Counted from the first letter of the whole stretch, positions 169 through 20,866 are shown. The stretch is DNA of 63,773 bases, filler included, from Octopus bimaculoides (GCF_001194135.2; 7 parts of 6 records of this genome joined end to end with filler, not necessarily neighbours in it); one strand, 5' to 3'. A program made the numbers and translations. Notes: generated by a model not told the origin, from the sequence alone.

Positions 169-302
169 GTGGAGAATGGAGCAACAAATACAAGAAGAAG
201 CAATTCTGTTGGGCTAGTTAGCCGTTGTTTTATTGTGTGGAGGTTATGTAATGAGTCATTGTGAATGTTATGTAATAGTCATTTACGTACGTTATATATA
301 TA

Positions 303-1171
303 TAAGATCTGATCAATAAGTATCTGAACTGTTGCCATAGTAACGAAGCTAAAGCATGCAGAGTGAAGATGTTTGACCAAAATGGACCTTGAACTCTGCT
401 GTGCATGTGCACAAAGTTTTAATGTTCTAACTGACTTCCACTGTTTACAGCAGTGCTTGGAAGGAAAGTGTGTAGCATGTGATCCTTGCATTGACCATGA
501 CAGAGAAAGTTGAGCAGAGAATGTACATGATATTCTGCCAAAAGCTTGGTGATACCTGCTCAGAGGCCTACGAAAAGTTTTCAAAATATTTTCTTTGTTC
601 TTGACACAATCAAGGAGATCTTGTGTAGCTGAAACCTGAGTGTCTCTTTGATCAGCTGAAAGCAGTTTTGGCACAAACTTGGCAGACACCTCTTTTACCC
701 AAACCTTCAGTGATAATAGACTGAACTGAACCGTAACTAATCTGCCCATCCTCTGATAACTTATGGATGGTGATTTGATGATTTTCCCTCACAGCTGCAG
801 CACATCTGCAATATTTTCTCAGTTCTGCTGGTTGCAGGTCTCTCGGAACATTCATCAATATTGACATTTATTCAGCCATCTTGGAAATGTCCGAACCACC
901 CACACACTCCTCTCCGTACATTTTCTGCAACCTTGCATAGGCCTCTGAGTAGGCATTGCCAGGAAAACTTCCTGTCTTGGTCAATGTGATGATCACATGC
1001 TACACACATTCCTTCCAAGCACTGCTGTAAACAGTGGAAGTGAGCTAGAATGTTAAAACTCAGTGCACATGCACAGCAGAGTTCAAGGTCAGTCTGTGCC
1101 AAGCGGCTCACTCTGTGTACTTTAGCTTTGTTACTATGGCAACAGTCCAGGTACTTATTGATCAGACCTCA
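303..1171 (-). mobile_element. Non-autonomous mariner derivative with an inverted duplicated 5' end (foldback)
   Basis: Termini (a)gatctgatcaataagta...ttgccatagtaac (about 305) and gttactatggcaac...tacttattgatcagacctc (about 1130-1170) are inverted and TA-flanked. Minus-strand remnants encode mariner HTH/WVP-region sequence (ISYGSVQSII, VSAKFVPKLLSADQ). The left ~280 bp are an inverted copy of the 5' end. Confidence 0.8.
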
Positions 1172-1977: not shown

Positions 1978-2234
1978 ATCAATCAACCAAATAAAGAAGG
2001 TTACACACCTCTGCATCTAGCCTGTGAGAGGGGAAACAAAAACATCGTTCAGTACCTACTTGGTTGTAATGCTGATGTAAATGTGAAGAACCGTGAGGAT
2101 GCAACACCTCTCAGTTTAGCCTGTAAGAAAGATCACCCAGACACTGTTTGTCTGTTACTGCAGATGAGTAATCCTGATTGCAATGTAGTGTACGATGATA
2201 AAGATAACACACCTCTACACTGGGCTATTCAAAC
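1978..2234 (+). CDS. MIB2-like ankyrin/RING gene, internal exon A (ankyrin repeats); gene continues upstream of the window
   Basis: ttttcag acceptor and ac|gtaagt donor. Encodes INQPNKEGYTPLHLACERGNKNIVQYLL...DATPLSLAC...DNTPLHWAIQ (TPLH ankyrin motifs). Confidence 0.92.
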
Positions 2235-2749
2235 GTAAGTCCCCATTGATCTGGAATATCCATATTTGTTTCTTTTGTTTTCAATAATCTTTGATTTTAT
2301 TGAGTCCTTCATGTCATAATCCCATCATGGATCATGGATCCTTCTACTCTCTTTCACACTGTAATGGCAAGGTAATCTACTTCATTAATTAATCGTCACC
2401 ATAATTATTGTTGTTGTTATCTGACTAGATTCTTTACTTCATCTCATCCTCTGTTAATATTACAGATTCAAATTCACTCTCTTCTCACTTTCACTCCATG
2501 TAAAACTCAACATCTCTCTTTCTCTCTCTCTCTCTCGTTAGCAATGTTCATCTTTCTTTTGACCCTGGGCTAAATACAGAATCATCACCTTATATTATTT
2601 AGTTTTGTCTCTATGTTCCTACTGGAATATCTACTGTCACTCTGGAGTTGATAATTTGTAATACCAGTAATATCCAGGGGTCATTTAATAAACTTTTCCC
2701 ACCTCTCTTGTTCTTGTGTCTTATTACTTTGTATTATTCATGACTACTC

Positions 2750-2915
2750 TTTTACTTGTTTCAGTCATTTGACTGCGGCCATGTTGGAGCACCGCCTTTA
2801 GTCGAGCAAATCGACCCCAGGACTTATTCTTTGTAATATTGGTCTCTTTTGCCGAACCGCTAAGTTACGGGGACGTAAACACACCAGCATCGGTTGTTAA
2901 GCGATGTTGGGGGGA

Positions 2916-2991
<76 letters not shown>

Positions 2992-3160
2992 TATCTACGA
3001 CGGACTTCTTTCAGTTTCCGTCTACCGAATCCACTCACAAGGCTTTGGTCAGCCTGAGGCTATAGTAGATGACACTTGCTCAAGGTGCCACACAGTGGGA
3101 CTGAACCCGGAACCATGTGGTTGGTAAGCAAGCTACTTACCACACATCCACTCCTACGCC
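2750..3160 (-). mobile_element. tRNA-derived SINE, family A
   Basis: Reverse-complement match to 21558-21943 (tRNA-like head, (CA)/(TA) spacer, tail ...gctccaacatggccgcagtcaaatgactgaaacaagtaaa). Confidence 0.85.
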
Positions 3161-3548
3161 TATAACATTCAGACTCTTAACATTCGGAGCTTAAAACCTG
3201 CTGAGGTCAACTTGGCCTTCTATCTTTGCAAGGTTGATCAAATGCAATACCAGTCATGTACTGGGCTCCATATAATTATACCCCCATCTCCTAAGTTTCA
3301 CCTCTATATAACAGTTATTTATTGTACCATATATACATTGCTCTGTTTACTCAGGTATGTATATATCGTTGTCTTACTGTGTAATGTGTATGTTAACTAT
3401 ATGGGTGTGTGTGTGTCTAAATAACTGTTGACGCAATTAGGTTTTAGTGACCTAATTACACTTGTTTTACATTAATTAATGACCTAATAATTACTAATAA
3501 TCTCAATTTCTGTGATGCTTGTATGTTTTCTATTTCTTTGATTTTCAG

Positions 3549-3585
3549 GAATCACTATGATATGGCTTTATTGATTCTATCCAAG
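3549..3585 (+). CDS. MIB2-like gene, 37-nt exon B
   Basis: ttttcag acceptor and aag|gttag donor. The phase-2 entry completes T and then reads NHYDMALLILSK, finishing the ankyrin helix started in exon A. Exits in phase 0. Confidence 0.85.
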
Positions 3586-3834
3586 GTTAGTTGTCATTCT
3601 TTTTCACTTGTTTCAGTTGTATGACTGGCCATGCTGAAGCACTGCCTTTAAGGGTTTTATTCAAACAAGTCGACCTCAGGACTTATTCTATCAATCTCTT
3701 TTGCTGAACTACTGCATTACAGGGAGCACAAATACACTAACAATGGTTGTCAAATGATGTATATGTATATATATATATATATACATATGTATATATGTAT
3801 ATGTATATACTCTTATATATGTATATATATGAGA

Positions 3835-4195
3835 GAGAATCGTGATGTCGTAGGAGAGAAATGTGTCCGCTTGGATGATGGCTCACTTGCACTAAACGAG
3901 GCTGCAAAGATAGAGGTTTGGAGATGCCACTATGAAAGGCTGTTTAATAAAGAGAATGAATGGGAGGAAGAGAGTCTGCTGCATGTCGACCCAACAGAGG
4001 GACCAGCTATCCTAATTGACATTACCTTGGTAGATAAAGCAATCAAGATTATGAAGACAGGGAAAGCCCTCGGCCCATCAGGAATCACTGCTGAGATGCT
4101 CAAAATATCTGGCAGTGTTGGCTATAGCCTAGTCACCCGTATAGTCAATCAGGTAATACATGAAGGAGTCATACCCAATGACTGGTGTAGCAGGT
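3835..4195 (+). mobile_element. RTE-type non-LTR retrotransposon ORF fragment (tether/pre-RT region)
   Basis: Encodes VWRCHYERLFN...KAIKIMKTGKALGPSGITAEMLK...IPNDW, the typical KAxGPxGIxAE...IPxDW region. Confidence 0.85.
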
Positions 4196-4326
4196 CGACT
4201 TCACTGACAAGCATAAAATGTACATGATCAGTTTGATCAAGTGCTCAATAGAAAACAGTAATGGCATATTAATATCCATCATAATTTCCATGTAAATTTT
4301 TGTCTTCTATTTTTACCTCTACAAAG

Positions 4327-4533
4327 CACATGGTGAAATTTGATACGGAGAACAAAGATGGAATGACACCATTGCTCCTTGCTGTCTCTGAGGGTCACCT
4401 CAGATTAATCCAACAATTCATTTCAAAAGGAGCAAATATAAACGCTGAGAATGCTGAAAAAGAAAACTGCCTGCACTACGCTGTAAAGAATTATTTTCAT
4501 TCTGAGGAGAAGTCCATAGATATTTTAGATGAG
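4327..4533 (+). CDS. MIB2-like gene, exon C (ankyrin repeats)
   Basis: Pyrimidine tract plus aag acceptor, and gag|gtaagt donor. Encodes HMVKFDTENKDGMTPLLLAVSEGH...ENCLHYAV...DILDE. The acceptor position is less certain than the donor. Confidence 0.88.
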
Positions 4534-5029
4534 GTAAGTTTTAAAATTGTTTGTGAATATATAAGAGATGGAAGCAGATCTAGTTTCTCTGTATAACCCT
4601 AGTTATATTATGTAACTAACAATATTCCATCAACTTCAACCATCAAAGAGATAGCTCTTTCACTGTAGAGAATGTAACCCATCTCAGATGTTGGCCATAT
4701 ACACACATCCACAACAGTGTGAAGGGGAGCTGATTTACTGAACAGAGGAGATATTATTCCTAATAATCAAAAATTCAGGATAATGGAAATGACAACTTTT
4801 ATAGCTCTGGTGCCATGATAAATCACCCAGTTCATTCTATGAAGTATTTTATGATTGAAACATCTCCCCTTTCACACTTCTTGTACACAACATATACCCA
4901 CTGATTTCTTGTGGATAGTTCATAACAATGTTGAATTCTTGAACACTTGAAAGTGAGTGTAAAGAAGATCCTTTGTGAGTTTCCTGTACTTAAGCTTTGT
5001 ATGTTCGATTATATATATCATCATTATCA

Positions 5030-5350
5030 TCATCATTGTTTAACGTCCGCTTTCCATGCTAGCATGGGTTGGACGGTTTGACTGAGGACTGGTGAACCAG
5101 ATGGCTACACCAGGCTCCAATCTGATTTGGCAGAGTTTGTACAGCTGGATGCCCTTCCTAACGCCAACCACTCCGAGAGTATAGTGGGTGCTTTTACGTG
5201 CCACCGGCAGGAGGTACTGGCAATGGCCACATTCGAAATGGTGTATTTTACATGCCACCTGCACACGGGCCAGTCCAGCGGCACTGGCAACGATCTCGCT
5301 CGAATGTCTTTTCACATGCCACTGGCACAAGTGCCAGGAAGGCAACGTTG
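5030..5350 (-). mobile_element. RTE 3'-UTR/tail repeat (short element family)
   Basis: Reverse-complement match to 56960-57270 and to the end of the LINE at about 11850-12015. Other copies at about 7975-8150, 14205-14480, 16085-16200, 16395-16490 and 50655-50790. Confidence 0.8.
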
Positions 5351-5357
5351 GTAACAG

Positions 5358-5392
<35 letters not shown>

Positions 5393-5946
5393 TTATACGT
5401 ACACAAAGGTACCAGCATCTAATGATCAGAAGATTTGATGCTTTGATGGTATTTATTATCAACTTTTGCAGAATTCAAGCAACTCTCTGATTTCCATATG
5501 AATAAAGGCCACTACAGGTGTGTGACAATATTTTGATGGTCATCTGTGTGGTTATAACATCTACTTTGGTAAAAAGAAGCCATTATGACAGTCAAATCTT
5601 ACCCTGTCTGATGGAATTGTTTATCAGACTAACAGTTTGAATGGTTTAGCAACTACAATGTATTGGTGTGCTGCCTCAACTGTGATACCAGTTCTTACTT
5701 TTACTTCCCCTTCATCATCTAAAGATGTTTCTTCATTAATAATGGAAACATTATTGATATGTTTGGATATGTCTTTGTGGTGTTGGTCATGTTATGTCTG
5801 AAGAAATTTCCATGTTGTTCTGTGTTAGTTCTGATATAACATATATTATTTGTTGTCATGTTGTTGTGTTACAGTCATATATAAAATACTCTTCCATCAG
5901 TATTTCTTTTGGTATGGCTTGTTGGCTTTATCAAACCAGCTATATA

Positions 5947-7175
5947 TTGGGTTGGCAACTAAGTTCCCGCTGTTTTTTTAATCTAAATTTTTTAAAAGGT
6001 TTAATAAAAAATAACAACTAATTAATTAATAATGTATTCACCCTTGTTGTTTACAACTTCTTCCCCACGTTCAACAAGATCTTCAATACCTCGTTGGTAG
6101 AAATCACCCGATTTTGACTCTCCTACCAAGCTCTCAATTCTGCATCAGTATTGAACGAAACTCAGTGCATAGCATTTGAAAGAGATCGAAAGAAGTGGAA
6201 ATCCGTTGGTGCCAAATCAGGAGAATACAGCGGGTGTGGCAGCACTTCCCAGCCATGCATTTGAGTGGCTTCCTTGGTCATATTGGCGATATGAAGGCAG
6301 GCGTTGTCGTGCAGCAGAACTCCATGCTGCCAACTTTCTCTTGAATAGCCATGTTGAGTTGTTCCATCCGTTGAACTGTTTGGTTCTGTTCAAGCAATTC
6401 ATAATGGAAAGTCTCTTCCCAGTCCCACCATACGCACAACATCGTTTTACGCGGATGAAGATCTTGTTTCACGCGTGGTGTCGCTTGTTTACCGGGGTTA
6501 AACCATTCCTTACACTGCTTCATATTCATGTACAGGCACCATTTTTCGTCGCCAGTAACGATTCAGTAAAGAAATCGTTGCTTGTGTCCATGAGTTGAGC
6601 AGTGACAAGCAAGCAAACCAGTGGAGATTGTGGCTCGTTGATTTTTGTTGTTGTCACTTAAAGTATGCGGAACCCATGCTCCATACTTCTGAACCTTTCC
6701 CATTGAGTGAAGATGCTTCAATATAGCAGTGTGGGAGCATTCCATTTTCTCTTCCAGTTCCCTTGTCATTTGACGAGAATTTTTGTGCAAAAGTTGGTTT
6801 AATCGCTCTTCATTGAACTCAACTGGACAGCAAGAACGAGGTGCGTCTTTGAGGTCAAAATTTCCATTTTTGAACTTAGTATACCAATAACGAGCGGTTC
6901 TTTCAGCTATGGCACCCTCTCCATACACAGCACAAATGTCACAAGCTGCTTTTGCAGCTTTAGAACCTTAATTAAAAACAAAAAGGAGGTGTTGAAAATG
7001 CTCGTTTTTCTTATACTTGACATTCCATTTTAATGATCTGAAAATAAACAAAATTTAACTAAAATTAATTAGAAAAAAAACAAAATAGATTCCAAAATAA
7101 TTCGAAACTAGAATTCTCAAAAAAAAAAATAGATTCCAAAATTTAAAAACAGCGGGAATTTAGTTGCCAACCCAA
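5947..7175 (-). mobile_element. Near full-length decayed mariner (DD34D) transposon in an intron of the MIB2-like gene
   Basis: TIRs ttgggttggcaactaagttcccgctgttttt / aaaaacagcgggaatttagttgccaacccaa with TA on both sides. Broken minus-strand transposase starting at ATG 7028 with WVPHTL, IVTGDEKW, MLCVWWD and YSPDLAP motifs. Confidence 0.95.
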
Positions 7176-7315
7176 TACATAAGTTCTTGTGTTTTATCAT
7201 TGTGATATTTGTTCCATTATATTTCCTATATTTGACACGATGCTATGATTTTGTTTACCTCTAATATATATTTGTGTAATACTAAACTCATCGTTTTATA
7301 TTTCACTATTTGTAG

Positions 7316-7515
7316 TTCTCCTTTAAGCTCTCTTTGAACAAAGATGACAGGCTTTCTGGAACAGTAGTAGCCTGTTATCTAGCACATAGTGGAGCCGACT
7401 TTTACCACGAAAACGATAAAAAGGAGATCCCATTGGATCACATAGCGGATAACAATACAAAAGAGAAAATCAAAACATTATTCCCACAACCATTACAACC
7501 ACCATCACCACCACG
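7316..7515 (+). CDS. MIB2-like gene, exon D (terminal ankyrin-like repeat)
   Basis: tttgtag acceptor and cg|gtaagt donor. VACYLAHSGADFYHENDKKEIPLDHI resembles the ACFLAxxGAD...N...PLDL segment that precedes the RINGs in Mind bomb proteins. Confidence 0.88.
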
Positions 7516-8167
7516 GTAAGTATTCGCTAGGTATAACGAGATAAACCTGTACATCTTGCATTTTGTCTATAATTGTGTTTATATGTTTTAGTTTTAATCC
7601 TACCAATACATTATACTATCATTAGTGTCTTGACCAAAGGCCACACAACAATAGAAAGAAGAACAATAAACAGAAAATACAGTTGTTAGAACACTATCTT
7701 AATTACATTCACATGATTTGCTGTGTTGACTGTCCACCTCCCCTACCTCTCTTAATTCCCTATTTTAAAGATCTGTGACCATCAGGAAAATTTAGTACTA
7801 AATAATGAAGTGAATGAACATATTTTGAAATTGTTACTGAAAAGAAAGTAGAATTTATTTATCTACCAACATTTTTCTATCTCTTTTCTCTGTCCCAATC
7901 CGTCATCATCCTGTAAGGTTTCTTAAAAGAAATATGATTAACAAATACATACGAACAGTGCATATCATCAAACATCCATTTTCCATGCTGGCATGGGTTG
8001 GATGGTTTGACTGAAAACTGGTAAGCTGGTGAGCTGCACCAAGTTCCAATCTGATTTGGCATGGTTTCTACAACTGGATGCTCTTCCTGTCACCAACTAC
8101 TCCAAGAGTGTAGTGGGTGCATTTTATGTACCACTGGCATTGGTGCCAGGGCTTAACAGGTCCTCTC

Positions 8168-8199
<32 letters not shown>

Positions 8200-8465
8200 T
8201 TCTACGTACATATATACATGCATAATGAAATTCCATTATGCAGCTGAGGAGTACATTTTCATTGTACATTTTATGTAGTGTTCTCACTACATAAATAAAT
8301 GGAGCTTGTATGAAACGTGCGTACTGCTATAACCTATTGAATTTTTGTTGCTTTTCTTCAAATTTTATTCACCAAATCTCTTGATTTTGTTTTTGGTTTT
8401 TACCCTACCAAATTCTGGTGCCTCAAACATTTTAAGTACCACATTTAATCTTTTGATTAAATCTA

Positions 8466-8496
<31 letters not shown>

Positions 8497-8970
8497 TATA
8501 NNNNNNNNNNNNNNNNNNNNNNNNNNNNNNNNNNNNNNNNNNNNNNNNNNNNNNNNNNNNNNNNNNNNNNNNNNNNNNNNNNNNNNNNNNNNNNNNNNNN
8601 NNNNNNNNNNNNNNNNNNNNNNNNNNNNNNNNNNNNNNNNNNNNNNNNNNNNNNNNNNNNNNNNNNNNNNNNNNNNNNNNNNNNNNNNNNNNNNNNNNNN
8701 NNNNNNNNNNNNNNNNNNNNNNNNNNNNNNNNNNNNNNNNNNNNNNNNNNNNNNNNNNNNNNNNNNNNNNNNNNNNNNNNNNNNNNNNNNNNNNNNNNNN
8801 NNNNNNNNNNNNNNNNNNNNNNNNNNNNNNNNNNNNNNNNNNNNNNNNNNNNNNNNNNNNNNNNNNNNNNNNNNNNNNNNNNNNNNNNNNNNNNNNNNNN
8901 NNNNNNNNNNNNNNNNNNNNNNNNNNNNNNNNNNNNNNNNNNNNNNNNNNNNNNNNNNNNNNNNNNNNNN

Positions 8971-9203
8971 TCTTCCACCACAACTTTCTCTCACTCTTAC
9001 TTCCTGTTTCTGTTGTGCCTGTAATTCAAAGGGTCAGCCTTGCCACACAGTGTCACGCTGAATATCCCCGAGAACTACGTTAAGGGTACACGTGTCTGTG
9101 GAGTGCTCAGCCACTTGCACGTTAATTTCACGAGCAGGCTGTTCCATTGATCGGATCAACTGGAACCCTCGACATCGTAAGCGATGGAGTGCCAACAACA
9201 ACA
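8971..9203 (+). mobile_element. SINE family C, 3' part
   Basis: Matches the reverse complement of 52232-52608 and ends in a (caa)n tail. Confidence 0.8.
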
Positions 9204-9605
9204 ATTTTATAAGCACATCAGCTGATAGTACAGTAGTGAATTCAAAAATGTGGCCAAAGTGGCATGATGATGGATAATCTTGTGAGATTTTGCCAAGTCA
9301 TCTGCTAGATGTGAAAACTGTAGTGTGTCAATACCTAGAGAAGTTATACATTCAATATATGGTGACTGATAGAGGATATATGCCTGGATGTATGTCTCTA
9401 GACAGCTTCCAGTAGAGTAATATTCTAGACAAAATGGGGGTTCCTGGTTGAAGAAGCATGTATAACTTTAAATAGATAGCTTGCGGATGGCAGACGCAGG
9501 TCTTACTGAGTGATGCTTAGGCACCTTTGAGCTTTTTGATGATTTTAGAGATGTGGTTTGCTCATCACAGTTCAATGTTGACATTAATACCTTTTCATTA
9601 CACAG

Positions 9606-9766
9606 ATTTTCATGTAAGTGGTGTAACGAAGATGAGCCCACTACGAAGATCTATTCCTGTAAGCAAGCTCATTTGGTGTTATGCAATGATTGTTTTATCA
9701 AAACTGGGCGTCCAGAATGCACCTCCTGTCAAAAGCCCTTAAACTTAAAAAGGAAAAGTAAACTTG
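9606..9766 (+). CDS. MIB2-like gene, exon E (RING finger 1)
   Basis: cacag acceptor (phase 2, matching exon D) and g|gtaag donor. Encodes CKWC-x11-CKQAH-x3-CNDC-x8-CTSC. Confidence 0.88.
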
Positions 9767-9881
9767 GTAAGAATATTATTTAATGATCTGTCTATTTATC
9801 TCATTGATTTTTATAAGTGTGGAATAATGTACTTATGTTGTTTTGTGAACCCAGGTATGCCATAATCTGGCATATTTAAGA

Positions 9882-10505
9882 TTAACCCTTTAGCATTTAA
9901 AATGGCCATATCCAGCCAAAATATTGTATTTGTTTTATGTTCAAACCAGCTAGATCTGGCCTCTTGCACCAACCCTACAATCTCATTCTAAAAATAAAGA
10001 ATCACTTCATCAAAATCTCAAATCTACACGATAATGCTTGATAAATTCAAAACCATGTGAATAAATAAGCATGTAGGGAAGTGGTTATACACCATTAGGT
10101 GTACTCCGCTCTCGTACATTAAATTTCTTGAATAAAACAACAGGAACGCAGACTCTAAACTATCAACACAACAATATTTATTACAATAGAATTCGGCAGC
10201 ACTTCGCCCTTTGGTTACTGAGACGCCGTCAATGAAGTTCGTGGTTATTTGTGTAGCTCCAGTGCTGGGTTGTGAGAGAGCTCTGTTGTGACGTCTAGGC
10301 TCTACGAAGGTCAGCTAGCAAGAGGGTGAAAGAAGCGGGAACGTTTGGATATCGATGACTACGCATGCGCATGAGACTCTTCCTGTATTCCTTCCGGAAC
10401 TAGTCCCTGCGCAAGCGTGGATAAACTTTCCGGAAATGTCATCTGCTATTAGGTGTCACTACAAGCATTACATTTGACCAAATAATCTGAATGTTAAAGA
10501 GTTAA
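9882..10505. mobile_element. piggyBac-like MITE (interrupted by a solo LTR)
   Basis: TTAA-CCCTTTAGCATT ... AATGTTAAAGAG-TTAA termini. Related copies at 17296-17400 and 17732-17951. Confidence 0.8.
10072..10463 (-). mobile_element. Solo LTR (392 bp)
   Basis: TGTAG...CTACA inverted termini and a 4-bp TSD AGCA (10068-10071, 10464-10467). The related MITE copy at about 17905-17920 has a single AGCA (empty site). Minus-strand AATAAA at 10177-10182. Confidence 0.85.
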
Positions 10506-11199
10506 AAGGCGTCTTTTCTCTGTGGTACTATGTCTATCACTACATATTCTCTTTACCCAATTGAAAGATTTGTCAGCATCAAACTAATTGATTGACACCT
10601 CAAAGTAAATGGTGACTAACTGAAATGTTGATAGACCTCCATGGTTCTATTTGTAAACACTAACTTTTTACAGTCAGTTTTGAGTGATTAGAAGCAATTA
10701 ATGATTTATCAGTATCTTGAGAAATTGATAAAGACAATGGTACAGTGGTGACATTTTTAGAGAAAACATTTCGTTTTCAGACAAATTTCTTTATTGCCTT
10801 TTTTTTATTTATTAGTATTTTTAATGCTGATTATGGAAATAACTTTTGTTTTTATCCATTTCCAATATTTTACTTGAAATTTTATTTTGAAGACCCCATT
10901 TTTGGCAAAAATGAGATAACTTGTCTTTCCATATTTTTTTTATTTATTGCTTTTTTTTTTCCAGCTTTATCATCAAAAGGAAAGGGGAATTACACATTTA
11001 TTTTACTCTTTTTTTTTAGCATGTCTTCTCAAAAATCTTTTTTATATATATATTTATTGCATTTACCTTCAGGGAAATTGAATTGCTTGACATGTAGCAA
11101 AGAAGAGTCTTGACATGTGGCAGATGTGCAGGTACAGTAAACATCAAGAATATATAAAAAATAGACTCCTTCATATGCGGGTGGGGGTGGGGGGTATCC

Positions 11200-12015
11200 C
11201 GAGAAGTAGTAGACAGTTTCTGTTACTTAGGTGACTAAATTAGTAGTTGGAGTTGTTCTGAAAGCATAGCTGTTAGAATAAGAATAGGCTGGGTGAAGTT
11301 CAGAGAGCAACTACCTCTGTTAGTAATGAAGGGCTTCTTCCTCGGAGTGAAATGCAGACTGTACGATGCCTTTGTAGGAACAGTTATGCTACATAGCAGT
11401 GAGACATGGGTTGTAACTACTGAGAATATGGGAAGGCTTGAAAGAAATGAAACCAGAATGCTTCCCAGGGTGGGTAATGTTAGTGTGCATATGACAGAGT
11501 GTAAGTGATCTGAGAATAAATCTAGGTATATGAGGCATCAGGTGTAGTGTGCAAGAGAGAAGACTGCACTGGTATGTAATGTGTATGAATGAAGACAGTT
11601 GCATCAAGAGGTGCTGATCTCTCATTGTAAAGGGAACATGTGGAAGGGGTACACCAACAAGATGTGGGATGAAGTGATGAGAAAGGATCTACAAATGTTA
11701 GGATTTACCGAGGGATGATGGGACTGCAACTCCTGGGGGTTTGCCGTACTTGAAAAGGCATGTCAAGCTAAGTAAATGAGTGGCTGCCTTTGCATATAGG
11801 CTTGTCCTCTGCAGCTGAGCATCCCTAATCTTGTGGGCCCATAGGTGTTGGTGCTGCATAAAAAGCACCCAGTACACTTTGTGAAGTGGTTGGCATTAGG
11901 AAAGGCACCCAGCCATAGAAACCATGCCTGAACAGTCCTTCAGCTGGTCAGCTCCTGTCAAACCATCCAACCCATACCAACATGGAAAATGGACATTAAA
12001 TGATGATGATAATGA
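11200..12015 (+). mobile_element. RTE-type LINE 3' end (decayed) with 3' UTR and (gat)n tail
   Basis: Encodes EVVDSFCYLGD, WVKFREQLPLL, MLHSSETW and RLERNE. Ends ...catggaaaatggacattaaatgatgatgat. Confidence 0.85.
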
Positions 12016-12166
12016 TGACCATCATTTTTTTAAATATCTAACTTCCATGGCCCTTTCATAATCCTACATTTTCACAGACTATTTCTTGGTTGTAATTTCC
12101 TGTTAAATTGCCTGATTCATAGTTTTCAACCTAAATATACTAACAGTTGTGCATTTATCATTTCAG

Positions 12167-12222
12167 ATGAGTCCCAAGTCGACGACCAAACCTCATGTAC
12201 ATGTACAACATGTATGGAGTGA
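12167..12222 (+). CDS. MIB2-like gene, last exon F up to the premature TGA
   Basis: tttcag acceptor (phase 1, matching exon E). Reads (D)ESQVDDQTSCTCTTCME then TGA at 12220-12222. Confidence 0.8.
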
Positions 12223-12339
12223 CATTGGAACATGGTCTTTGATTGTGGCCATACCATTTGTAAAGAATGTGGAGAAGGACTTGATAAGTTCCGTTTGTAT
12301 AGGAAACAAATTGAGAAAAAGACCATTGTTAAACATTAA
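12223..12339 (+). pseudogene. Relic second RING coding sequence beyond the premature stop
   Basis: The same frame continues HWNMVFDCGHTICKECGEGLDKFRLYRKQIEKKTIVKH-TAA. This matches the Mind bomb terminal RING pattern (NMVFxCGHxxCxxC...CPxCRK), but the last Cys pair is F and Y. Confidence 0.8.
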
Positions 12340-12477
12340 TTGCCCATTTCTTCTTATGTTCTTTTGTTTGTCTTATTATCTCATCTTGTCCCCACCACCC
12401 TTAATCACACGCACATATAAACATCTGATCTACCAATATTGGAACCTTTATCTACCATATTTTTGGTTGTTTTGATC

Positions 12478-12525
12478 AATAAACTTGACAAACCTTACAA
12501 AATCTGTACAAAACTGGTCAATAAA
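12478..12525 (+). terminator. Candidate polyadenylation signals of the MIB2-like gene
   Basis: AATAAA at 12478-12483 and 12520-12525, followed by a T/GT-rich tract. Confidence 0.55.
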
Positions 12526-12782
12526 TTTTAATTAGATGTTAACATTTTTCGTTCTTGTCATTGTTATGTGCATGTTGGACCATAGTGTCAGTTTAAGCTG
12601 TGAGAGCATTACAAAGGTAGGTCCTTAATGTGGGTTCTTCTGTTTTGGTGGTTAGGTTAGGTGCAATGAAAGCCTCTCTATATTCCTGTGGTTTAATCAG
12701 ATTTGGATGCATGTGGATGTTTATTATTATGTGATTATGAGACATCAATGTGTGTGTGTTTATATATATATATATATACCGT

Positions 12783-13288
12783 GGAGGTGCAATGGCCCAG
12801 TGGTTAGGGCAGCAGATTCGCAGTCGTAGGATCACGGTATCGATTACCAGACCGGGTGTTGTGAGTGTTTATTGAGCGAAAACACCTAAAGCTCCACGAG
12901 GCTCCGGCAGGGGATGGTGGCGAACCCTGCTGTACTCTTTCACCACAACTTTCTCTCTCTCTATGTGTGTATGTGAAGGCATGTGGCTTAATGGTTAGGC
13001 ATTCGGCTCACGATCATAAAGTCGCAAGTTCAATTCCCGGCGATGTGTTGTATCCTTGAGGAAGATGCTTTATTTCACGTTGCTCCAGTCCACTCTGCTG
13101 GCAAAAATGAGTAGTGCCTGTATTTCAAAAGGGTCAGCCTTGTCACACTCTGTGTCACGCTGAATCTCTCTGAGAATTATGTTAAGGGTACATGTGTCTG
13201 TGGAGTGCTCAGCCACTTGCATGTTAATTTCACAAGCAAGCTGTTCCAATGATCATATCAGCTGGGACCCTTGATGGAGTGCTCCTAT
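12783..13288 (+). mobile_element. Two adjacent SINEs (family C 5' half, then a family D-like head joined to a family C tail)
   Basis: tRNA-like heads at 12783 (ggaggtgcaatggcccagtggttagg) and about 12978 (ggcatgtggcttaatggttagg...gttcaattccc). The tail matches 9010-9190. Confidence 0.75.
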
Positions 13289-13695: not shown

Positions 13696-14569
13696 GTCTA
13701 GATTACTACAAACGTCATTCAAAGGGAGATAATAACAGTACTTCCAGTTTATATTTTTGTTTCTTTAGTAATATGTATTTTTGTAGAGATTTTTTTGTAA
13801 AAATCGTTGTTGGGTTTTCTTTCAGTAAGCATTTCAGAAAATATTTAATCTTTTATAAGGATTTCAAAGCTTGTTTCACGCAGATTTGTGTCTTTGTTCA
13901 ACCGATATTTAATCTACGACTATTCCGTCTTTGCTCTTGATGTATTTAGCTGGTATATGCATCAGAATACCAAAAGCACAAGTTCTGATAGGCTGGACAT
14001 GTCCCAAGGGTCACAGACAACAGGTGGACCCATGCAGTTGCCTTCTTGTTTTGTAATGGCATTTACCTGTCACAAAGTGAAGAAGATAAACCAGGTTTTC
14101 CTTTGCTAATGTCTTGATATCAAATGTTGGGCATTAATAGTACACCGATGCATGTACATATAATACATTTAATGTATCAGATGGTTATATTACATTTCAT
14201 CATCATAATCATCGTTTAACGTCCGCTTTCCATGCTAGCATGGGTTGGATGATTTGACTGAGGACTGGTGAACCAGATGGCTACACCAAGCTCCAATCTG
14301 ATTTGGCAGAGTTTCTACAGCTGGATGCCCTTCCTAACGCCAACCACTCCTAGAGTGTAGTGGGTGCTTTTATGTGCCACCAGCACGAAGGCCAGTCAGG
14401 AGATACTAGCAACGGCCATGCTCGAAATGGTGTATTTTACATGCCACCTGCACAGGAGCCAGTCCAGCGGTACTGGCAACGAACTCGCATCAAATTTGTT
14501 TTGTGTTAGTATTTAATGTAATTAATACGATATTTTATCTTACATAATTATTCCACTTGATATAACCAT

Positions 14570-16069: not shown

Positions 16070-16756
16070 TTAAATAGTCTGAGGACTGATAAGCTGTACC
16101 AGACCCCAGTCCAATTGTGGCTTGGTTTCTGCAGCTGGATGCCCTTCCTAATGCCAACCTCTCCAAGAGTGTAGTGGGTGCCTTTTACACATTACCAGCA
16201 TATTCCACGACTGTGATATCACTTGGCTCGACGAGTCTTCTGAAGCACTGCAAAACACCAACGGTCTCGATCATTGGTCATCAGCTCCATGAGACCCGAA
16301 ATCTGAAAATCATGCTTTACCACTTTGTCCCATGTCTTCCAGGGTCTACCTCTTCCACAGACTTCCCTCACATATACACCTTACTTGGAAACAAAGGTTT
16401 ATAACAGGAAGGGCATCCAGTCGTAGAAATTTTTCCACAACAATTTCCACCCGACCCATGCAAGCATGGAAAAATGGATCCTAAATGATTATAATGACAG
16501 CAGAATGAGCATGGTTATAAATGATGGACAAGAAGCAAACAGGAGTTAGGGGTTTCTAAGAAAGGAGAGTGTAACAGGAAATGAGTGACACTAACTTTGA
16601 TTAATTCTGTTGTATTCTTTTTTTTTTTTTTCTATCACACACTTGTCTATGTGCACCTAGACTCCCTAGGTTCTGGATTGCCTATGACAGCTGGAGTATG
16701 TCATATTAAAGTAACATGTGGTAAGTACTAAGTTATAAGTCAACGGGTACAGGTGA

Positions 16757-17075
16757 AGACGCATGGTTCAGTGGTTAGAACATCAGGCTCACAATCATAA
16801 GGTAATGAGTTCAATTCCCACACCAGGCTGTGTTGTGTTCTTGAGCAAGACACTTTATTTCACACTGCTTCCAGTTCACTCAGCTGTAGAAATGAGTTGT
16901 GATGTCACTGGTGCCAAGTTGTCTCAGCCTTTGCGATTTCCCTTGGATAACACTGGTGGTGTGGAGAGGGGGGGCTGGTATGCATGGGCGACTGCTGGCC
17001 TTCCATAAACAACCTTGCCCGGACTTGTGCCAGGGAGGGTAACTTTCTAGGTGCAATCTGATGGTTAATCATGAC
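16757..17075 (+). mobile_element. tRNA-derived SINE, family D
   Basis: tRNA-like A/B boxes (tggttcagtggtt; gagttcaattcc). The body matches the reverse complement of 45825-46085 and of about 47640-47850. Confidence 0.85.
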
Positions 17076-18526: not shown

Positions 18527-20866
18527 CTATTTAACAATGGTATTAGCAGACATTCCTTTGTTACCACTGAGAATGACATAAGGAGTTCTTTCTTGCTTTT
18601 GTTTTTCTTGTAGAAGAGTCAATGTATTAAGAGGAGTGTCTGTGGAACTCATCTGTTTCATCAATTGTTCTTCTTCTAATTTCTTCATGCGTTTCTCAGT
18701 CTTTTTCTTGCCTGGCCCCTTGCCATGGAAACGGTGAGAGAGCTGACGAAACGCTTCTTTTTCATTTAACAATCGTCCAGAATCGTCGGCATATTCTAAC
18801 CGAACGTCTGGCTTGTATCCTTCTTTCTCTTTGAAGTCTACCAACATCCCCGTGTACCGATCTCTCTTGCGGTACTTTTCGTCAAGGTCATCATATCGTT
18901 TGTCCTCAATAGAATAATGAATAGCTTCGAGACCGCTGTGTTTGGGACCACTGGGCATTCGTTTGCTCTGATTCTCCAGGTAACCCTTTTTCTGTGCTAC
19001 TTGTAAAGCTGCTGCAAGTCCCATATTTATAGCTGGTTCTTCATCCAAGACTGCATTTTCCTCTTTCACAATATTAACAGGTTTAGTATCAATATCAACC
19101 TCGTTCCACTGACTCGACAGATCCTCTTCATCTTGGATTTTTTTCTTACGTTCCATCAATTCCAATTCTAAATCCAAAAAGGCATCGCGTTCTTCATCAC
19201 GATTGCCAGCTAAACCATAAGTTGGAATGTCACCTAAAGCACGACAAAATTCTGACGTAGCATTTAAAATAATGTCACTTTTTTTCATCTCACTATCAAA
19301 TGCATTGGAACCCAGCGACTGGGTGTGGTGCAATGTTTTGGCGATTTCGTCAGGAACTGTCCGTTCTCTCCTTTGTTTCAACTTCCGCACTTTATCTAAA
19401 GTGGAGTAAAGTTCATTCATTGCATCATCTTCATCTACGACATAACTGTTGTAGATGTCGCTGTCGTCGTGCCCCAGAATGGTCGTTTCTTCTGGCTGCT
19501 GTTGATCTATGTCCATATCTTCCACCTCTATTCTAGGAGAAACCGACTCTTTACCATCTTCTGTAGGATTCTCAGTTTTTATTTTCATTTTCCGATTTCC
19601 AAGGTCATTACCATTCCTGGCATCACCGACCTCATCAGGCATGTTCAATAAATCATCTGGTTTTAATATTTTCTTGCGGATTTTTCTCTTCACCTTTTTA
19701 ACTTTGTTAAATTTAGCTGATTCCACTTCCTCATTAGTGTAATATTCCCTGGCTAGAGTTGACAACTGTACAAGGTTTTGACTCTGTTGTTTTAATTCCT
19801 TACGAATTCTTTCAAGATCTCGTTCAGCAGATGGAACATATTTACCACCAGATCCAAGTTCAAAAGATGTAATTTTCTTACCATAAATTTCCTCATCATA
19901 TTTACTCAACATGGCTTCTTTTTGGGGTTGGAAATCATCAGTAAATTCTTCATCATCATATGGGGTATATTCAGGTTTCTTCTTTTTAATCTCGTTATTT
20001 TTTATAGCAACTTCATCTTCATGTAACCTGGGATTAACAAGAACATCTTGGTCTTCAGTTAAAACTTGGTTGTCTTTAAGAGTCAAAATAACGGTACTAC
20101 CTTCTTTGAAACTGTCCAAATTATGTTCAACTTTGAAACCTTTTAGATCTCTAGACGAATAATTCTTCTTCTTCTTATCTTTATTAAATTCTTCTTCCAT
20201 TAAACTACCAATTCCAAAGTCTTCGTCCATCTGATCCAACATTTTCGCCGTTTTCTCTGCCATTTCGCGATCGTGTTCCAGCTTTCGACTTTTCTCAATC
20301 CATTTCTTCACATCGTCGTCATCCGCTCCGTCTCCCAACGTTTTGATCTTGCTAAACTTGTCATAAATTTTCCTCTTCTCTCGCAGAAGTTCGGTTTTCT
20401 CCCGGATCTTATTCGTTCGTTTCATTTCACCCAAATTCACCGCAGGCACATGGACATCTTCAGATTTCTTCGCGACTGTCTCAGTAGTTCCAATGTCTTC
20501 TCCACCAGCACTGGCGGCCCCAGAACCGGAACCACTAACATCTAAGGGCCTCATCCCAAGCTTTATCCTTAACCTATTCGCCTCTTCGATACTCAAAGAA
20601 CAGGTATTACTGTTGCTACCACTGGTATTATTATTATTGTTATTACCAGCGGTAGAAGCAGCGCCCCCGGAGGAACCACTGTTGAACGGTGTTTCCTTCC
20701 TCTCTGAACTACTAATATCATGTTTATGAGAAGATTTCTTACTTTCATCTTTGTCCCGCCGCTTCTTGCTTTGATGCTCCTTGTTTCGTGACCGTGACGA
20801 AGATCTCCGCCTGTGTTTATGTCGGTGTTCTCGGTCAGATTTGTGTTTCTTCGACGAGGAACCCAT
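18527..20866 (-). CDS. SART1: U4/U6.U5 tri-snRNP-associated protein 1 (SART1/Snu66), 779 aa, intronless CDS
   Basis: Uninterrupted ORF with an RS/RH-rich N-terminus, the Hub1-interaction (HIND) motif LSIEEANRLRIKLGMRPL, and conserved SART-1 blocks (LTLKD..VL, ILNATSEFCRALGDIPTYG, EAFRQLSHRFHGKGPGKKKTEKR). Start context is aaaATGG. Confidence 0.97.
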   Translation of the reverse strand: MGSSSKKHKSDREHRHKHRRRSSSRSRNKEHQSKKRRDKDESKKSSHKHDISSSERKETPFNSGSSGGAASTAGNNNNNNTSGSNSNTCSLSIEEANRLRIKLGMRPLDVSGSGSGAASAGGEDIGTTETVAKKSEDVHVPAVNLGEMKRTNKIREKTELLREKRKIYDKFSKIKTLGDGADDDDVKKWIEKSRKLEHDREMAEKTAKMLDQMDEDFGIGSLMEEEFNKDKKKKNYSSRDLKGFKVEHNLDSFKEGSTVILTLKDNQVLTEDQDVLVNPRLHEDEVAIKNNEIKKKKPEYTPYDDEEFTDDFQPQKEAMLSKYDEEIYGKKITSFELGSGGKYVPSAERDLERIRKELKQQSQNLVQLSTLAREYYTNEEVESAKFNKVKKVKRKIRKKILKPDDLLNMPDEVGDARNGNDLGNRKMKIKTENPTEDGKESVSPRIEVEDMDIDQQQPEETTILGHDDSDIYNSYVVDEDDAMNELYSTLDKVRKLKQRRERTVPDEIAKTLHHTQSLGSNAFDSEMKKSDIILNATSEFCRALGDIPTYGLAGNRDEERDAFLDLELELMERKKKIQDEEDLSSQWNEVDIDTKPVNIVKEENAVLDEEPAINMGLAAALQVAQKKGYLENQSKRMPSGPKHSGLEAIHYSIEDKRYDDLDEKYRKRDRYTGMLVDFKEKEGYKPDVRLEYADDSGRLLNEKEAFRQLSHRFHGKGPGKKKTEKRMKKLEEEQLMKQMSSTDTPLNTLTLLQEKQKQERTPYVILSGNKGMSANTIVK

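What the first reader, a model, noticed from the sequence alone, without database searches (positions are those of the whole stretch)
1978..12339. Mind bomb 2-like E3 ligase with an intact ANK+RING1 body but a selectively destroyed terminal RING
Seen: five exons are open with matching splice phases. The last exon alone carries TGA (12220-12222, plausibly from CGA) and has lost the final Cys pair (TTC and TAT where CPxC is expected). A stop in the last exon would normally escape NMD. Known: the C-terminal RING of Mind bomb proteins is important for ligase activity, and a zebrafish mib allele in that RING is antimorphic. Inference: a diverged paralogue encoding a one-RING decoy or modulator of Notch or innate-immune ubiquitination, or a young pseudogene.
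Basis: partly seen in the sequence, partly recalled or inferred. Interest (0 to 1): 0.7.

Follow-up and report, generated by a model that had tools for sequence, protein, structure and literature searches.

The report
Octopus ankyrin-RING gene, dead terminal RING
An octopus-specific, shortened relative of the Mind bomb ubiquitin ligases has lost its last, probably catalytic, RING finger: that exon survives only as a broken relic behind a transposon while the rest of the gene stays intact, which is an ordinary domain loss in a gene family with high turnover.

Summary
The window is Octopus bimaculoides chromosome CM046627.1. The gene is RefSeq XP_014785653.1, named "MIB2". The core observation holds. 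The exon at 12167-12339 is a homologue of the family's terminal RING. It carries TGA (12220-12222) where paralogues have Arg, and TTC and TAT where they have the last two zinc-binding Cys. Corrections: the window holds six exons, not five (a 37-nt exon at 3549-3585 is needed for frame), and three more intact exons lie upstream. The N gap is intronic. The annotated protein skips the broken exon and ends in a 13-codon alternative exon (11073-11113), upstream of a sense-oriented repeat that carries poly(A) signals. The gene is not a true Mind bomb: it has no MIB/HERC2, ZZ or REP domains. It belongs to an Octopus-restricted family of ANK-linker-RING1 proteins whose tails vary (RING2, Death domain or other), and in which RING2-less members are common. 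All three disabling hits fall in exon 9 (p about 0.01 if the whole gene were neutral), and RING1 keeps 8/8 ligands. So a RING2-less, probably ligase-dead protein is more likely than a dead gene, but a young pseudogene is not excluded. Expression, population data and an orthologue could not be checked. Interest is low to moderate.

The parts
1978..2234 (+). Coding exon 4 of 9 (ANK repeats). It is 204 nt (two ANK repeats) shorter than the same exon of paralogue XP_014787114.1.
   Evidence: Acceptor tttttcag|ATC, donor AC|gtaagt; identical to residues 133-218 of XP_014785653.1.
3549..3585 (+). It is required to keep the frame between 2234 and 4327.
   Evidence: ttttcag|GAATCAC...CCAAG|gttagt; present in the annotated protein. 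The paralogue has a 37-nt exon at the same place.
4327..4533 (+). Coding exon 6 (last ANK repeats).
7316..7515 (+). Coding exon 7 (helical linker conserved across the family, then Pro-rich end).
   Evidence: matched by the family profile.
8501..8970 (.). Assembly gap inside intron 7. It does not touch the reading frame.
9606..9766 (+). Coding exon 8: RING1, C-x2-C-x11-C-x3-H-x3-C-x2-C-x8-C-x2-C. All 8 ligands are kept and the surface is heavily remodelled.
   Evidence: zf-C3HC4_3 26.3 bits against 51.9 in the paralogue; ligands 8/8 kept, other family invariants 1/8 kept, Fisher p 0.0014.
11073..11113 (+). Annotated alternative terminal coding exon (G)KLNCLTCSKEES*. It has no counterpart in the paralogue's intron 8.
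   Evidence: In phase with the donor at 9766. It reproduces the C-terminus of XP_014785653.1 / UniProt A0A0L8FYY4. Nothing in the paralogue's locus matches it.
11236..12030 (+). Interspersed-repeat fragment in intron 8, in sense orientation. It has a LINE-like ORF remnant at 11293-11508, carries AATAAA (11515) and ATTAAA (11995), and ends about 135 nt before the RING2 acceptor.
   Evidence: Copies in other octopus loci. Homology with the paralogue's locus resumes only at 12048. Sequence; signals. No Pfam hit, so its class is inferred.
12167..12339 (+). Relic of the ancestral last exon (RING2, homologue of MIB1 RING3). The acceptor and a TACTAAC branch site are intact. Damage: TGA 12220-12222 (for Arg), TTC 12289-12291 (for Cys7), CGT 12292-12294 (for His), TAT 12298-12300 (for Cys8). 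Original TAA at 12337-12339.
12478..12525 (+). Two AATAAA signals (12478, 12520) downstream of the relic exon, likely the ancestral 3' end.
   Evidence: The 3'UTR is alignable with paralogues up to about 12424.

Best explanation
The locus is a lineage-specific member of an Octopus-restricted family that descends from the C-terminal half of Mind bomb 2: ANK repeats, a helical linker, an IAP-like RING1 and a terminal RING2 homologous to MIB1 RING3. In this copy the terminal RING has been lost.

Shown: the ancestral last exon still sits 2.4 kb downstream of exon 8 with good splice signals, but it carries a stop and lacks two zinc ligands. The annotated mRNA instead ends in a new 13-codon exon. 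That exon lies just upstream of a sense-oriented repeat that carries poly(A) signals.

Whichever 3' end is used, the product is the same kind of protein: about 433-438 aa, seven ANK repeats plus a remodelled RING1 and no RING2.

Inferred: by analogy with MIB1, where only the terminal RING transfers ubiquitin, this product is probably ligase-dead or has a changed E2 specificity. It would then act through its ANK domain as a binder, adaptor or competitor of its two-RING paralogues.

Inferred order of events: the repeat inserted or the new 3' exon arose, the RING2 exon dropped out of the mRNA, and the exon then decayed. The reverse order is equally possible.
For: Identity and structure:
- The window equals CM046627.1:17384849-17405961 with 0 mismatches. 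The gene product is XP_014785653.1.
- There are nine coding exons with canonical sites and matching phases, the same plan as paralogue XP_014787114.1, whose exon 9 is an intact RING2.

RING2 relic:
- Codon-by-codon alignment with four intact paralogues.
- All 8 window-specific nucleotide changes in the exon are non-synonymous or nonsense.
- The family RING2's best solved match is MIB1 RING3 (8v0d, E 2.9e-11). MIB1 activity relies solely on RING3.

The rest of the gene is still constrained:
- Three of three disabling hits fall in exon 9, which holds 22% of the target (p 0.010).
- If exons 1-8 had been neutral for t = 0.035-0.05 substitutions per site, the chance of no stop, no splice hit and no frameshift is about 0.0001-0.06.
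- RING1 keeps 8/8 ligands while 7/8 other family-invariant residues changed (p 0.0014).
- The ANK domain scores Pfam Ank E 2e-53 with 7 repeats. AlphaFold2 gives pLDDT above 90 up to about residue 355, and the top Foldseek hit is the MIB1 ANK domain, 8v0e.

Family context:
- A profile search of 1.84 billion representatives finds 25 clusters at E < 1e-30.
- All eight of the top-scoring clusters I looked up are Octopus species.
- Many match linker plus RING1 only, with a Death domain or another tail in place of RING2.
Against: - No expression data could be consulted. No transcript-derived protein for this gene turned up in the protein collection.
- No orthologue is annotated in O. sinensis or O. 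vulgaris. Yet the duplication (dS 0.78) is older than the species split (SART1 dS 0.43), and paralogue XP_014787114.1 has orthologues at 90% identity or more in both species. This suggests the gene is dispensable.
- The window lineage has evolved 2.5 times faster in the ANK region and 5-14 times faster in RING1 than its closest paralogue. My rough estimate of lineage dN/dS is 0.65-0.9, which is not far from neutral.
- The ORF-integrity argument weakens if the decay is very recent (t = 0.02 gives P = 0.03-0.2).
- That RING1 alone cannot transfer ubiquitin is an analogy to MIB1. It was not tested.
Confidence: 0.5

Rival explanations
1. Young pseudogene. The whole gene is already non-functional. 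The RING2 hits are simply the first disabling mutations to appear, and the annotated alternative last exon is an annotation pipeline's way of closing an ORF.
For: - No orthologue is annotated in O. sinensis or O. vulgaris.
- It has the longest branch in the family tree.
- ANK and RING1 evolve faster than in the closest paralogue. Pairwise dN/dS is 1.0 in RING1 and 0.45 in ANK.
- Lineage-specific non-synonymous to synonymous counts are 97:34 against 52:27 in the paralogue.
- Two ANK repeats have been deleted.
- No transcript-derived copies were found.
Against: - Disabling hits cluster in exon 9 (p 0.010).
- No stop, frameshift or splice-site loss occurs in 1263 coding nt and 8 exons.
- RING1 ligands are selectively retained (p 0.0014).
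- The ANK fold is predicted with high confidence.
- The same 433-aa model is held under a RefSeq accession and a UniProt accession. That these come from independent annotations is my inference.
Confidence: 0.3
2. Assembly error or segregating allele. The reference individual or assembly carries errors or a rare null allele in exon 9, and the species has a functional two-RING gene.
For: - The assembly is short-read based with many N gaps nearby.
- TGA at a former CpG-containing Arg codon is a typical single-step polymorphism from CGA.
Against: - Four separate window-specific replacements hit conserved RING2 positions (stop, C to F, H to R, C to Y), and four more lie elsewhere in the exon. A single error or allele does not explain them.
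- Gene annotation also avoids the exon.
Confidence: 0.07
3. Recoding rescues RING2. Cephalopod A-to-I editing would turn UGA into UGG and UAU into UGU, or the stop would be read through or decoded as selenocysteine, so that a RING2-bearing protein is still made.
For: - Two of the lesions (TGA, TAT) are G-to-A changes that editing could in principle reverse at the RNA level.
- The exon and its flanks are unusually conserved at the nucleotide level.
Against: - TTC (Phe for Cys7) cannot be edited back, so at most 7 of 8 ligands return.
- No local RNA structure is predicted (z +0.85 and +0.96).
- No SECIS or other Rfam family is found.
- The annotated mRNA does not contain the exon.
Confidence: 0.02

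Closest known systems
Mind bomb E3 ligases (MIB2 / MIB1)
   Same: - ANK-repeat domain: the top Foldseek hit is the MIB1 ANK domain, 8v0e.
- The ANK domain is followed by zf-C3HC4_3 RINGs.
- The family's terminal RING best matches MIB1 RING3 (8v0d).
- The family's linker-RING1-RING2 profile also hits true MIB proteins, including O. bimaculoides XP_014786080.1, which has Mind bomb REP/SH3_15 repeats.
   Different: - No MIB/HERC2, ZZ or REP (SH3_15) domains, even at E <= 10.
- 433 aa against about 1000 aa.
- The protein starts directly with ANK repeats.
- The terminal RING is dead.
- It is therefore not an orthologue of MIB2 despite the RefSeq name.
Octopus ANK-linker-RING1-RING2 paralogues, e.g. 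XP_014787114.1 (O. bimaculoides), XP_029652975.1 (O. sinensis), XP_014783380.1
   Same: - Same nine-exon plan and intron phases.
- Homologous introns.
- Same linker.
- RING2 exon 86% identical in nucleotides to XP_014787114.1.
   Different: - RING2 is disabled and bypassed.
- Two fewer ANK repeats.
- RING1 carries insertions and 7/8 invariant non-ligand residues replaced.
- Longest branch in the tree.
- No cross-species orthologue found.
RING2-less members of the same Octopus family (ANK-RING1-Death domain, e.g. XP_036355466.1, XP_014782788.1; ANK-RING1 plus another tail, e.g. XP_036370839.1, XP_014776763.1)
   Same: ANK plus linker plus RING1 with no terminal RING, the architecture the window gene now encodes.
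   Different: - Those members carry a Death domain or a longer tail.
- Here the tail is 13 residues, and the dead RING2 exon is still visible in the genome.
Engineered or mutant Mind bomb lacking terminal-RING function (Mib1 deltaRF3, zebrafish mib1 ta52b)
   Same: ANK plus non-catalytic RING(s) without a working terminal RING. Such proteins are antimorphic (PMC8937233). ANK-RING1-2 of MIB1 has no autoubiquitination activity.
   Different: Those proteins keep the N-terminal substrate-binding region, which is how they trap Delta. The octopus protein has none, so any decoy action would have to work through the ANK domain or through heteromerisation.

Membership tests
Mind bomb (MIB1/MIB2) E3 ligases | N-terminal MZM module (MIB/HERC2 - ZZ - MIB/HERC2) | tested here: not met
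   Pfam scan of the full annotated protein at E <= 10 finds no PF06701 or PF00569. True MIBs found in the same session have both. All nine exons are mapped and the protein starts with ANK repeats.
Mind bomb (MIB1/MIB2) E3 ligases | REP / Mind bomb SH3 repeats (PF18346) | tested here: not met
   No hit in P0001 or P0002. Present in O. bimaculoides XP_014786080.1 and in P0280 and P0353.
Mind bomb (MIB1/MIB2) E3 ligases | Central ankyrin-repeat domain | tested here: met
   Pfam Ank E 2.2e-53, 7 repeats. AlphaFold2 pLDDT above 90. Best Foldseek hit is the MIB1 ANK domain, 8v0e, E 1e-16, TM 0.74. ANK hits are generic, so this carries little weight alone.
Mind bomb (MIB1/MIB2) E3 ligases | Functional C-terminal RING (MIB1 RING3 type) with eight zinc ligands | tested here: not met
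   The homologous exon is present but has an in-frame TGA and ligands 7 and 8 replaced by F and Y. It gives no zf-C3HC4_3 hit.
Octopus ANK-linker-RING family (N-terminally truncated MIB2 derivatives) | Conserved helical linker plus RING1 after the ANK repeats | tested here: met
   The family profile hits P0001 at E 4.1e-30 over profile positions 2-120. Alignments.
Octopus ANK-linker-RING family (N-terminally truncated MIB2 derivatives) | Shared exon-intron plan with paralogues | tested here: met
   Nine exons of 84/152/163/257/37/207/200/161 nt plus the last exon, against 84/152/160/461/37/210/179/149/176 nt in XP_014787114.1, with the same phases. Intron homology.
C3HC4 RING finger (for RING1) | Eight ligands with consensus spacing C-x2-C-x(9-39)-C-x(1-3)-H-x(2-3)-C-x2-C-x(4-48)-C-x2-C | tested here: met
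   C-x2-C-x11-C-x3-H-x3-C-x2-C-x8-C-x2-C. The consensus itself is from established knowledge.
C3HC4 RING finger (for RING1) | Pfam zf-C3HC4_3 at or above the gathering score | tested here: not met
   26.3 bits for the isolated domain and 20.5 in the whole protein, against a cut-off of 27. Paralogue RING1 scores 51.9. The miss is narrow.
C3HC4 RING finger (for RING1) | E2 binding and ubiquitin transfer | not testable with these tools
   AlphaFold2 confidence in RING1 is low (46-62), but the intact paralogue's RINGs also score low (RING1 65-72, RING2 29-48). The model is therefore uninformative.
Pseudogene (whole gene) | Disabling mutations spread over the coding sequence or lost splice sites | tested here: not met
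   None in exons 1-8 or at their 15 splice junction dinucleotide pairs. All three disabling hits are in exon 9.
Pseudogene (whole gene) | Neutral dN/dS on the lineage | tested here: inconclusive
   Pairwise omega is 0.45 (ANK) and 1.0 (RING1). Lineage-specific non-synonymous to synonymous counts are 97:34 against 52:27, Fisher p 0.21. Synonymous sites are near saturation and no orthologue is available.
Pseudogene (whole gene) | No expression | not testable with these tools
   No RNA-seq access.

The most novel reading that the evidence does not exclude
The gene is kept by selection as a naturally evolved, ligase-dead ANK-RING1 protein. It would be the evolutionary counterpart of the antimorphic Mib1 deltaRF3 constructs, titrating partners or heteromerising with its two-RING or Death-domain paralogues in an octopus-specific signalling family, possibly immune or cell-death related. 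Its birth by transposon-driven replacement of the last exon would still be visible in the genome.
Probability: 0.15. Interest if true: 0.5.

Novelty: new member of a known kind. Interest (0 to 1): 0.25.

Why it matters
On its own it matters little. It is one more domain loss in a lineage-specific gene family with high turnover, and the RING2-less product is already in RefSeq under a misleading MIB2 name.

Three modest points of value:
- It shows that the many octopus "MIB2 / MIB2-like" annotations are a separate, Octopus-restricted family of N-terminally truncated Mind bomb derivatives with interchangeable C-terminal modules (RING2, Death domain, other). They should not be used to infer Notch biology.
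- The locus is a clean snapshot of how a terminal catalytic domain is shed. An intact acceptor, a relic exon with three fresh lesions, a new upstream terminal exon and a repeat carrying poly(A) signals sit side by side.
- If the product proves to be expressed and constrained, it would be a natural test of whether ANK-RING1 without the terminal RING acts as a decoy.

Tried and rejected
- Orthologue by synteny. I fetched the O. sinensis SART1 locus with 10-kb flanks (L002). Synteny runs from window 21469 back to 13853 and then breaks into non-homologous, repeat-rich sequence. No ANK or RING exon lies within reach.
- The Argonauta hians SART1 flank (L003) has only low-complexity ORFs.
- TERT as a second anchor was dropped. 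The annotated first exon of the O. bimaculoides TERT model is poor and the region is full of N gaps.
- None of the O. sinensis or O. bimaculoides paralogue loci I fetched is next to TERT or SART1.
- Two look-ups (P0004, P0006) found no record.
- The third word-indexed protein search, with the linker-RING region, returned a single hit and was uninformative. The exhaustive profile search replaced it.
- Gene conversion or RNA structure as the cause of low synonymous divergence in exon 9: RNA folding shows nothing. Conversion remains possible but unproven.
- A-to-I editing rescue is rejected because Phe at ligand 7 cannot be edited back.
- Selenocysteine or SECIS: no Rfam hit.
- A second, intact RING2 or a Death-domain exon elsewhere in the window: none.
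- AlphaFold2 as a test of RING1 integrity is rejected as uninformative. The intact paralogue's RINGs are also modelled with low confidence from the same 9-sequence alignment.
- A weak tblastn match of RING1 to the minus strand at 16392-16514 falls in a repeat family that recurs at 5150, 14308 and 16116. I take it as chance or repeat, not a RING.

Full report
WHERE THE WINDOW COMES FROM. Its locus is GCA_001194135.2 CM046627.1:17366980-17405961 (L001), and L001 overlaps the window with zero mismatches over 21,113 bases (window position = L001 position - 17869). The upstream neighbour, head to head, is a telomerase reverse transcriptase model. The downstream neighbour is SART1 on the minus strand at window 18527-20866.

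THE GAP, TESTED FIRST. The N run 8501-8970 lies between coding exon 7 (7316-7515) and exon 8 (9606-9766). Its left flank ends in a (TTA)n(TA)n microsatellite and its right flank starts inside a SINE-like repeat. Both sides are collinear with the closest paralogue's locus: window 7263-7921 aligns with L004 22936-23920, and window 9751-9856 with L004 24922-25026. Exon 7 ends two bases into a codon and exon 8 supplies the third, which reproduces the annotated "PPR|FSCKWC". The paralogue goes from exon 7 straight to exon 8, and family alignments show no residues missing at this point. The gap is therefore intronic and its unknown length does not affect the frame. An extra exon hidden in the gap cannot be formally excluded, but nothing calls for one.

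GENE STRUCTURE.
- The annotated protein maps to nine coding exons, all with AG/GT sites and matching phases.
- Three exons lie upstream of the window (about -7868, -5001, -2787). Six lie inside it: 1978-2234, 3549-3585, 4327-4533, 7316-7515, 9606-9766 and 11073-11113.
Without it the 2234-to-4327 junction is out of phase.
- The annotated last exon (11073-11113, "KLNCLTCSKEES*") is not the RING2 exon. No database protein uses the RING2 exon.

THE OBSERVATION. The exon at 12167-12339 has a good acceptor (72% pyrimidines, a TACTAAC branch site 30 nt upstream) and is in phase with the exon-8 donor. It reads DESQVDDQTSCTCTTCME*HWNMVFDCGHTICKECGEGLDKFRLYRKQIEKKTIVKH*.

Four intact paralogues (two from O. 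bimaculoides, two from O. sinensis) read ...C-T-I-C-M-E-R-x-W-N-M-V-F-x-C-G-H-T-x-C-K-E-C-G-x(5)-C-H-L-C-R-K-x-I-E.... At the nucleotide level (three paralogues):

| Window codon | Position | Paralogue codons | Paralogue residue |
|---|---|---|---|
| TGA | 12220-12222 | CGG / CGG / CGT | Arg |
| TTC | 12289-12291 | TGT / TGC / TGC | Cys7 |
| CGT | 12292-12294 | CAT | His |
| TAT | 12298-12300 | TGT | Cys8 |

No second RING2-like or Death-domain exon exists in the window.

WHAT THE FAMILY IS.
- Neither the window protein nor its paralogues have MIB/HERC2, ZZ or Mind bomb REP domains, even at E <= 10. They start directly with ANK repeats.
- The family's terminal RING best matches MIB1 RING3 among solved structures (8v0d, E 2.9e-11). 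RING1 resembles IAP RINGs.
- A profile of the linker-RING1-RING2 region was searched exhaustively against 1.84 billion representative proteins. It finds 25 clusters at E < 1e-30.
- All eight of the top-scoring clusters I looked up are O. bimaculoides, O. sinensis or O. vulgaris.
- Many of the hits match only linker plus RING1, with a Death domain or an unrelated tail in place of RING2.
- True Mind bomb proteins match the same profile more weakly. These include O. bimaculoides XP_014786080.1 with REP repeats, and full-length proteins with MIB/HERC2 and ZZ.
- The family is therefore an Octopus-restricted set of N-terminally truncated Mind bomb derivatives with exchangeable C-terminal modules. 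The name "MIB2" is a similarity label, not orthology.

HISTORY OF THIS COPY.
- The closest paralogue is XP_014787114.1. It lies on the same chromosome 17 Mb away, has the same nine-exon plan, and still has alignable introns.
- Outside exon 9 the pair has dS 0.78 and dN 0.39. In exon 9 dS is 0.23, or 6 of about 30 synonymous sites, which has binomial p 0.0013 against the rest of the gene.
- For scale, SART1 between O. bimaculoides and O. sinensis has dS 0.43. The duplication therefore predates that species split.
- XP_014787114.1 has orthologues at 90% identity or more in O. sinensis and O. vulgaris. The window gene has none above 44%.
- Relative-rate counts give the window lineage 2.5 times more amino-acid changes in the ANK region and 5-14 times more in RING1. 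It also has the longest branch in a neighbour-joining tree, where its sister grouping with XP_014787114.1 has only 65% bootstrap support.
- It has lost two ANK repeats from exon 4.

IS THE DECAY SELECTIVE?
- RING1 and RING2 show opposite patterns. In RING1 all 8 ligands are kept but only 1 of 8 other family-invariant residues (Fisher p 0.0014). In RING2 20 of 23 non-ligand invariants are kept but 2 of 8 ligands are lost, and there is a stop. RING1 has been remodelled under constraint on its zinc scaffold. RING2 was conserved until recently and then broke.
- The relic has only 8 lineage-specific nucleotide changes, against 6-14 in its functional paralogues. All 8 are non-synonymous or nonsense.
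- Counting only unambiguous disabling targets, exon 9 holds 31 of 143 site-equivalents. Three hits of three there has p 0.010 if the whole gene were neutral.
- If exons 1-8 had drifted for t = 0.035-0.05, the chance of staying free of stops, splice hits and frameshifts is 0.0001-0.06. At t = 0.02 it is 0.03-0.2.
- These tests favour continued constraint on exons 1-8 but do not prove it. Lineage dN/dS is high, by my rough split 0.65-0.9.

HOW THE RING WAS BYPASSED.
- Intron 8 contains an interspersed-repeat fragment of about 800 bp (about 11236-12030) in sense orientation. It has a LINE-like ORF remnant, AATAAA at 11515 and ATTAAA at 11995.
- Homology with the paralogue's locus resumes at 12048, just after the repeat ends. 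The insertion is therefore specific to this copy.
- The annotated terminal exon lies 120 nt upstream of the repeat and has no counterpart in the paralogue.
- A plausible but inferred mechanism follows. The insertion supplied a polyadenylation site, a cryptic acceptor at 11072 created a new last exon, and the RING2 exon fell out of the mRNA and decayed. The opposite order, with the stop first, cannot be excluded.
- Either 3' end yields an ANK-RING1 protein of 433-438 aa.

LIKELY FUNCTION. In MIB1, ubiquitin transfer depends solely on the terminal RING3, and ANK-RING1-2 is inactive in autoubiquitination (bioRxiv 10.1101/2024.03.01.582834). Mib1 lacking RF3 function is antimorphic (PMC8937233). 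By homology the window protein has probably lost ligase activity. Unlike Mib1 deltaRF3 it has no Notch-ligand-binding N-terminus, so any decoy effect would have to go through its ANK domain or through association with paralogues. This is inference. AlphaFold2 models the ANK solenoid confidently but is uninformative for the RINGs, even in the intact paralogue.

VERDICT. My probabilities are 0.5 for an expressed RING2-less gene under relaxed constraint, 0.3 for a young pseudogene, 0.07 for an artefact or segregating allele, and 0.02 for recoding. Expression, population data and orthologues, all outside the reach of these tools, would decide.

Noticed in passing
window 18527-20866 (-); L002 10001-12343; L003 10001-12160: SART1 (U4/U6.U5 tri-snRNP protein 1) is a single uninterrupted 779-codon ORF here. 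The O. sinensis and Argonauta hians genes are also called as one exon. From general knowledge, SART1 is multi-exonic in most animals, so octopods may carry a retrogene that replaced the parent. O. bimaculoides against O. sinensis: dS 0.43, dN/dS 0.07.
   Followed up: partly
window 12100-12420; L004 28470-28790; L005 17073-17390; L006 23665-23985: The RING2 exon, about 65 nt of intron before it and part of the 3'UTR are conserved at the nucleotide level among paralogues on different chromosomes. Synonymous divergence in exon 9 is well below that of the rest of the gene: 0.23 against 0.78 for the window gene against XP_014787114.1. Gene conversion or nucleotide-level constraint could explain it. 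Local RNA folding gives no signal.
   Followed up: partly
window 6217-6928 (-) and 279-867 (-): Mariner/Mos1-type transposase remnants (Pfam HTH_48 and Transposase_1) with internal stops, one of them inside intron 6 of the gene.
   Followed up: partly
window 3754-4227 (+): A 157-codon ORF that looks like the start of a LINE reverse transcriptase, in sense orientation in intron 5 and ending 100 nt before exon 6. It has no Pfam hit.
   Followed up: no
window 5011-5209, 7964-8148, 14192-14424, 16098-16189; also 8971-9192, 12781-12962, 13111-13271: Two short interspersed repeat families, each with several copies in the window. Copies in other O. bimaculoides and O. sinensis loci reach 95% identity. 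No tRNA or Rfam match.
   Followed up: no
L002 (reverse complement) 7494-8139, against window 16652-16835: A segment that is single-copy in O. bimaculoides is a 161-bp tandem array of about five units in the syntenic O. sinensis intergenic region.
   Followed up: no
L001 1-6249 (outside the window, upstream): A telomerase reverse transcriptase gene model lies head to head with the ANK-RING gene, 3.7 kb from its start codon. Its annotated first exon looks unconvincing and the region is full of N gaps.
   Followed up: no
proteins P0007, P0008 (O. sinensis ANK-RING1-Death paralogues): RING1 zinc ligands are themselves partly replaced in the Death-domain members: Ser at ligand 5 in P0007 and Asp at the His position in P0008. 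RING1 may therefore be degenerate in several branches of the family.
   Followed up: no
protein P0244 (representative search hit, 3387 aa): A protein with 51 separate matches to the RING part of the family profile, apparently a giant tandem array of MIB-type RINGs. Its organism is unknown.
   Followed up: no
O. sinensis CM016887.1 (17.06 Mb): Several family members sit on this one O. sinensis chromosome: XP_029652975, XP_029653072, XP_036370839 and XP_029653061. The close accession numbers suggest a tandem cluster. The two O. bimaculoides copies on CM046627.1 are 17 Mb apart.
   Followed up: no
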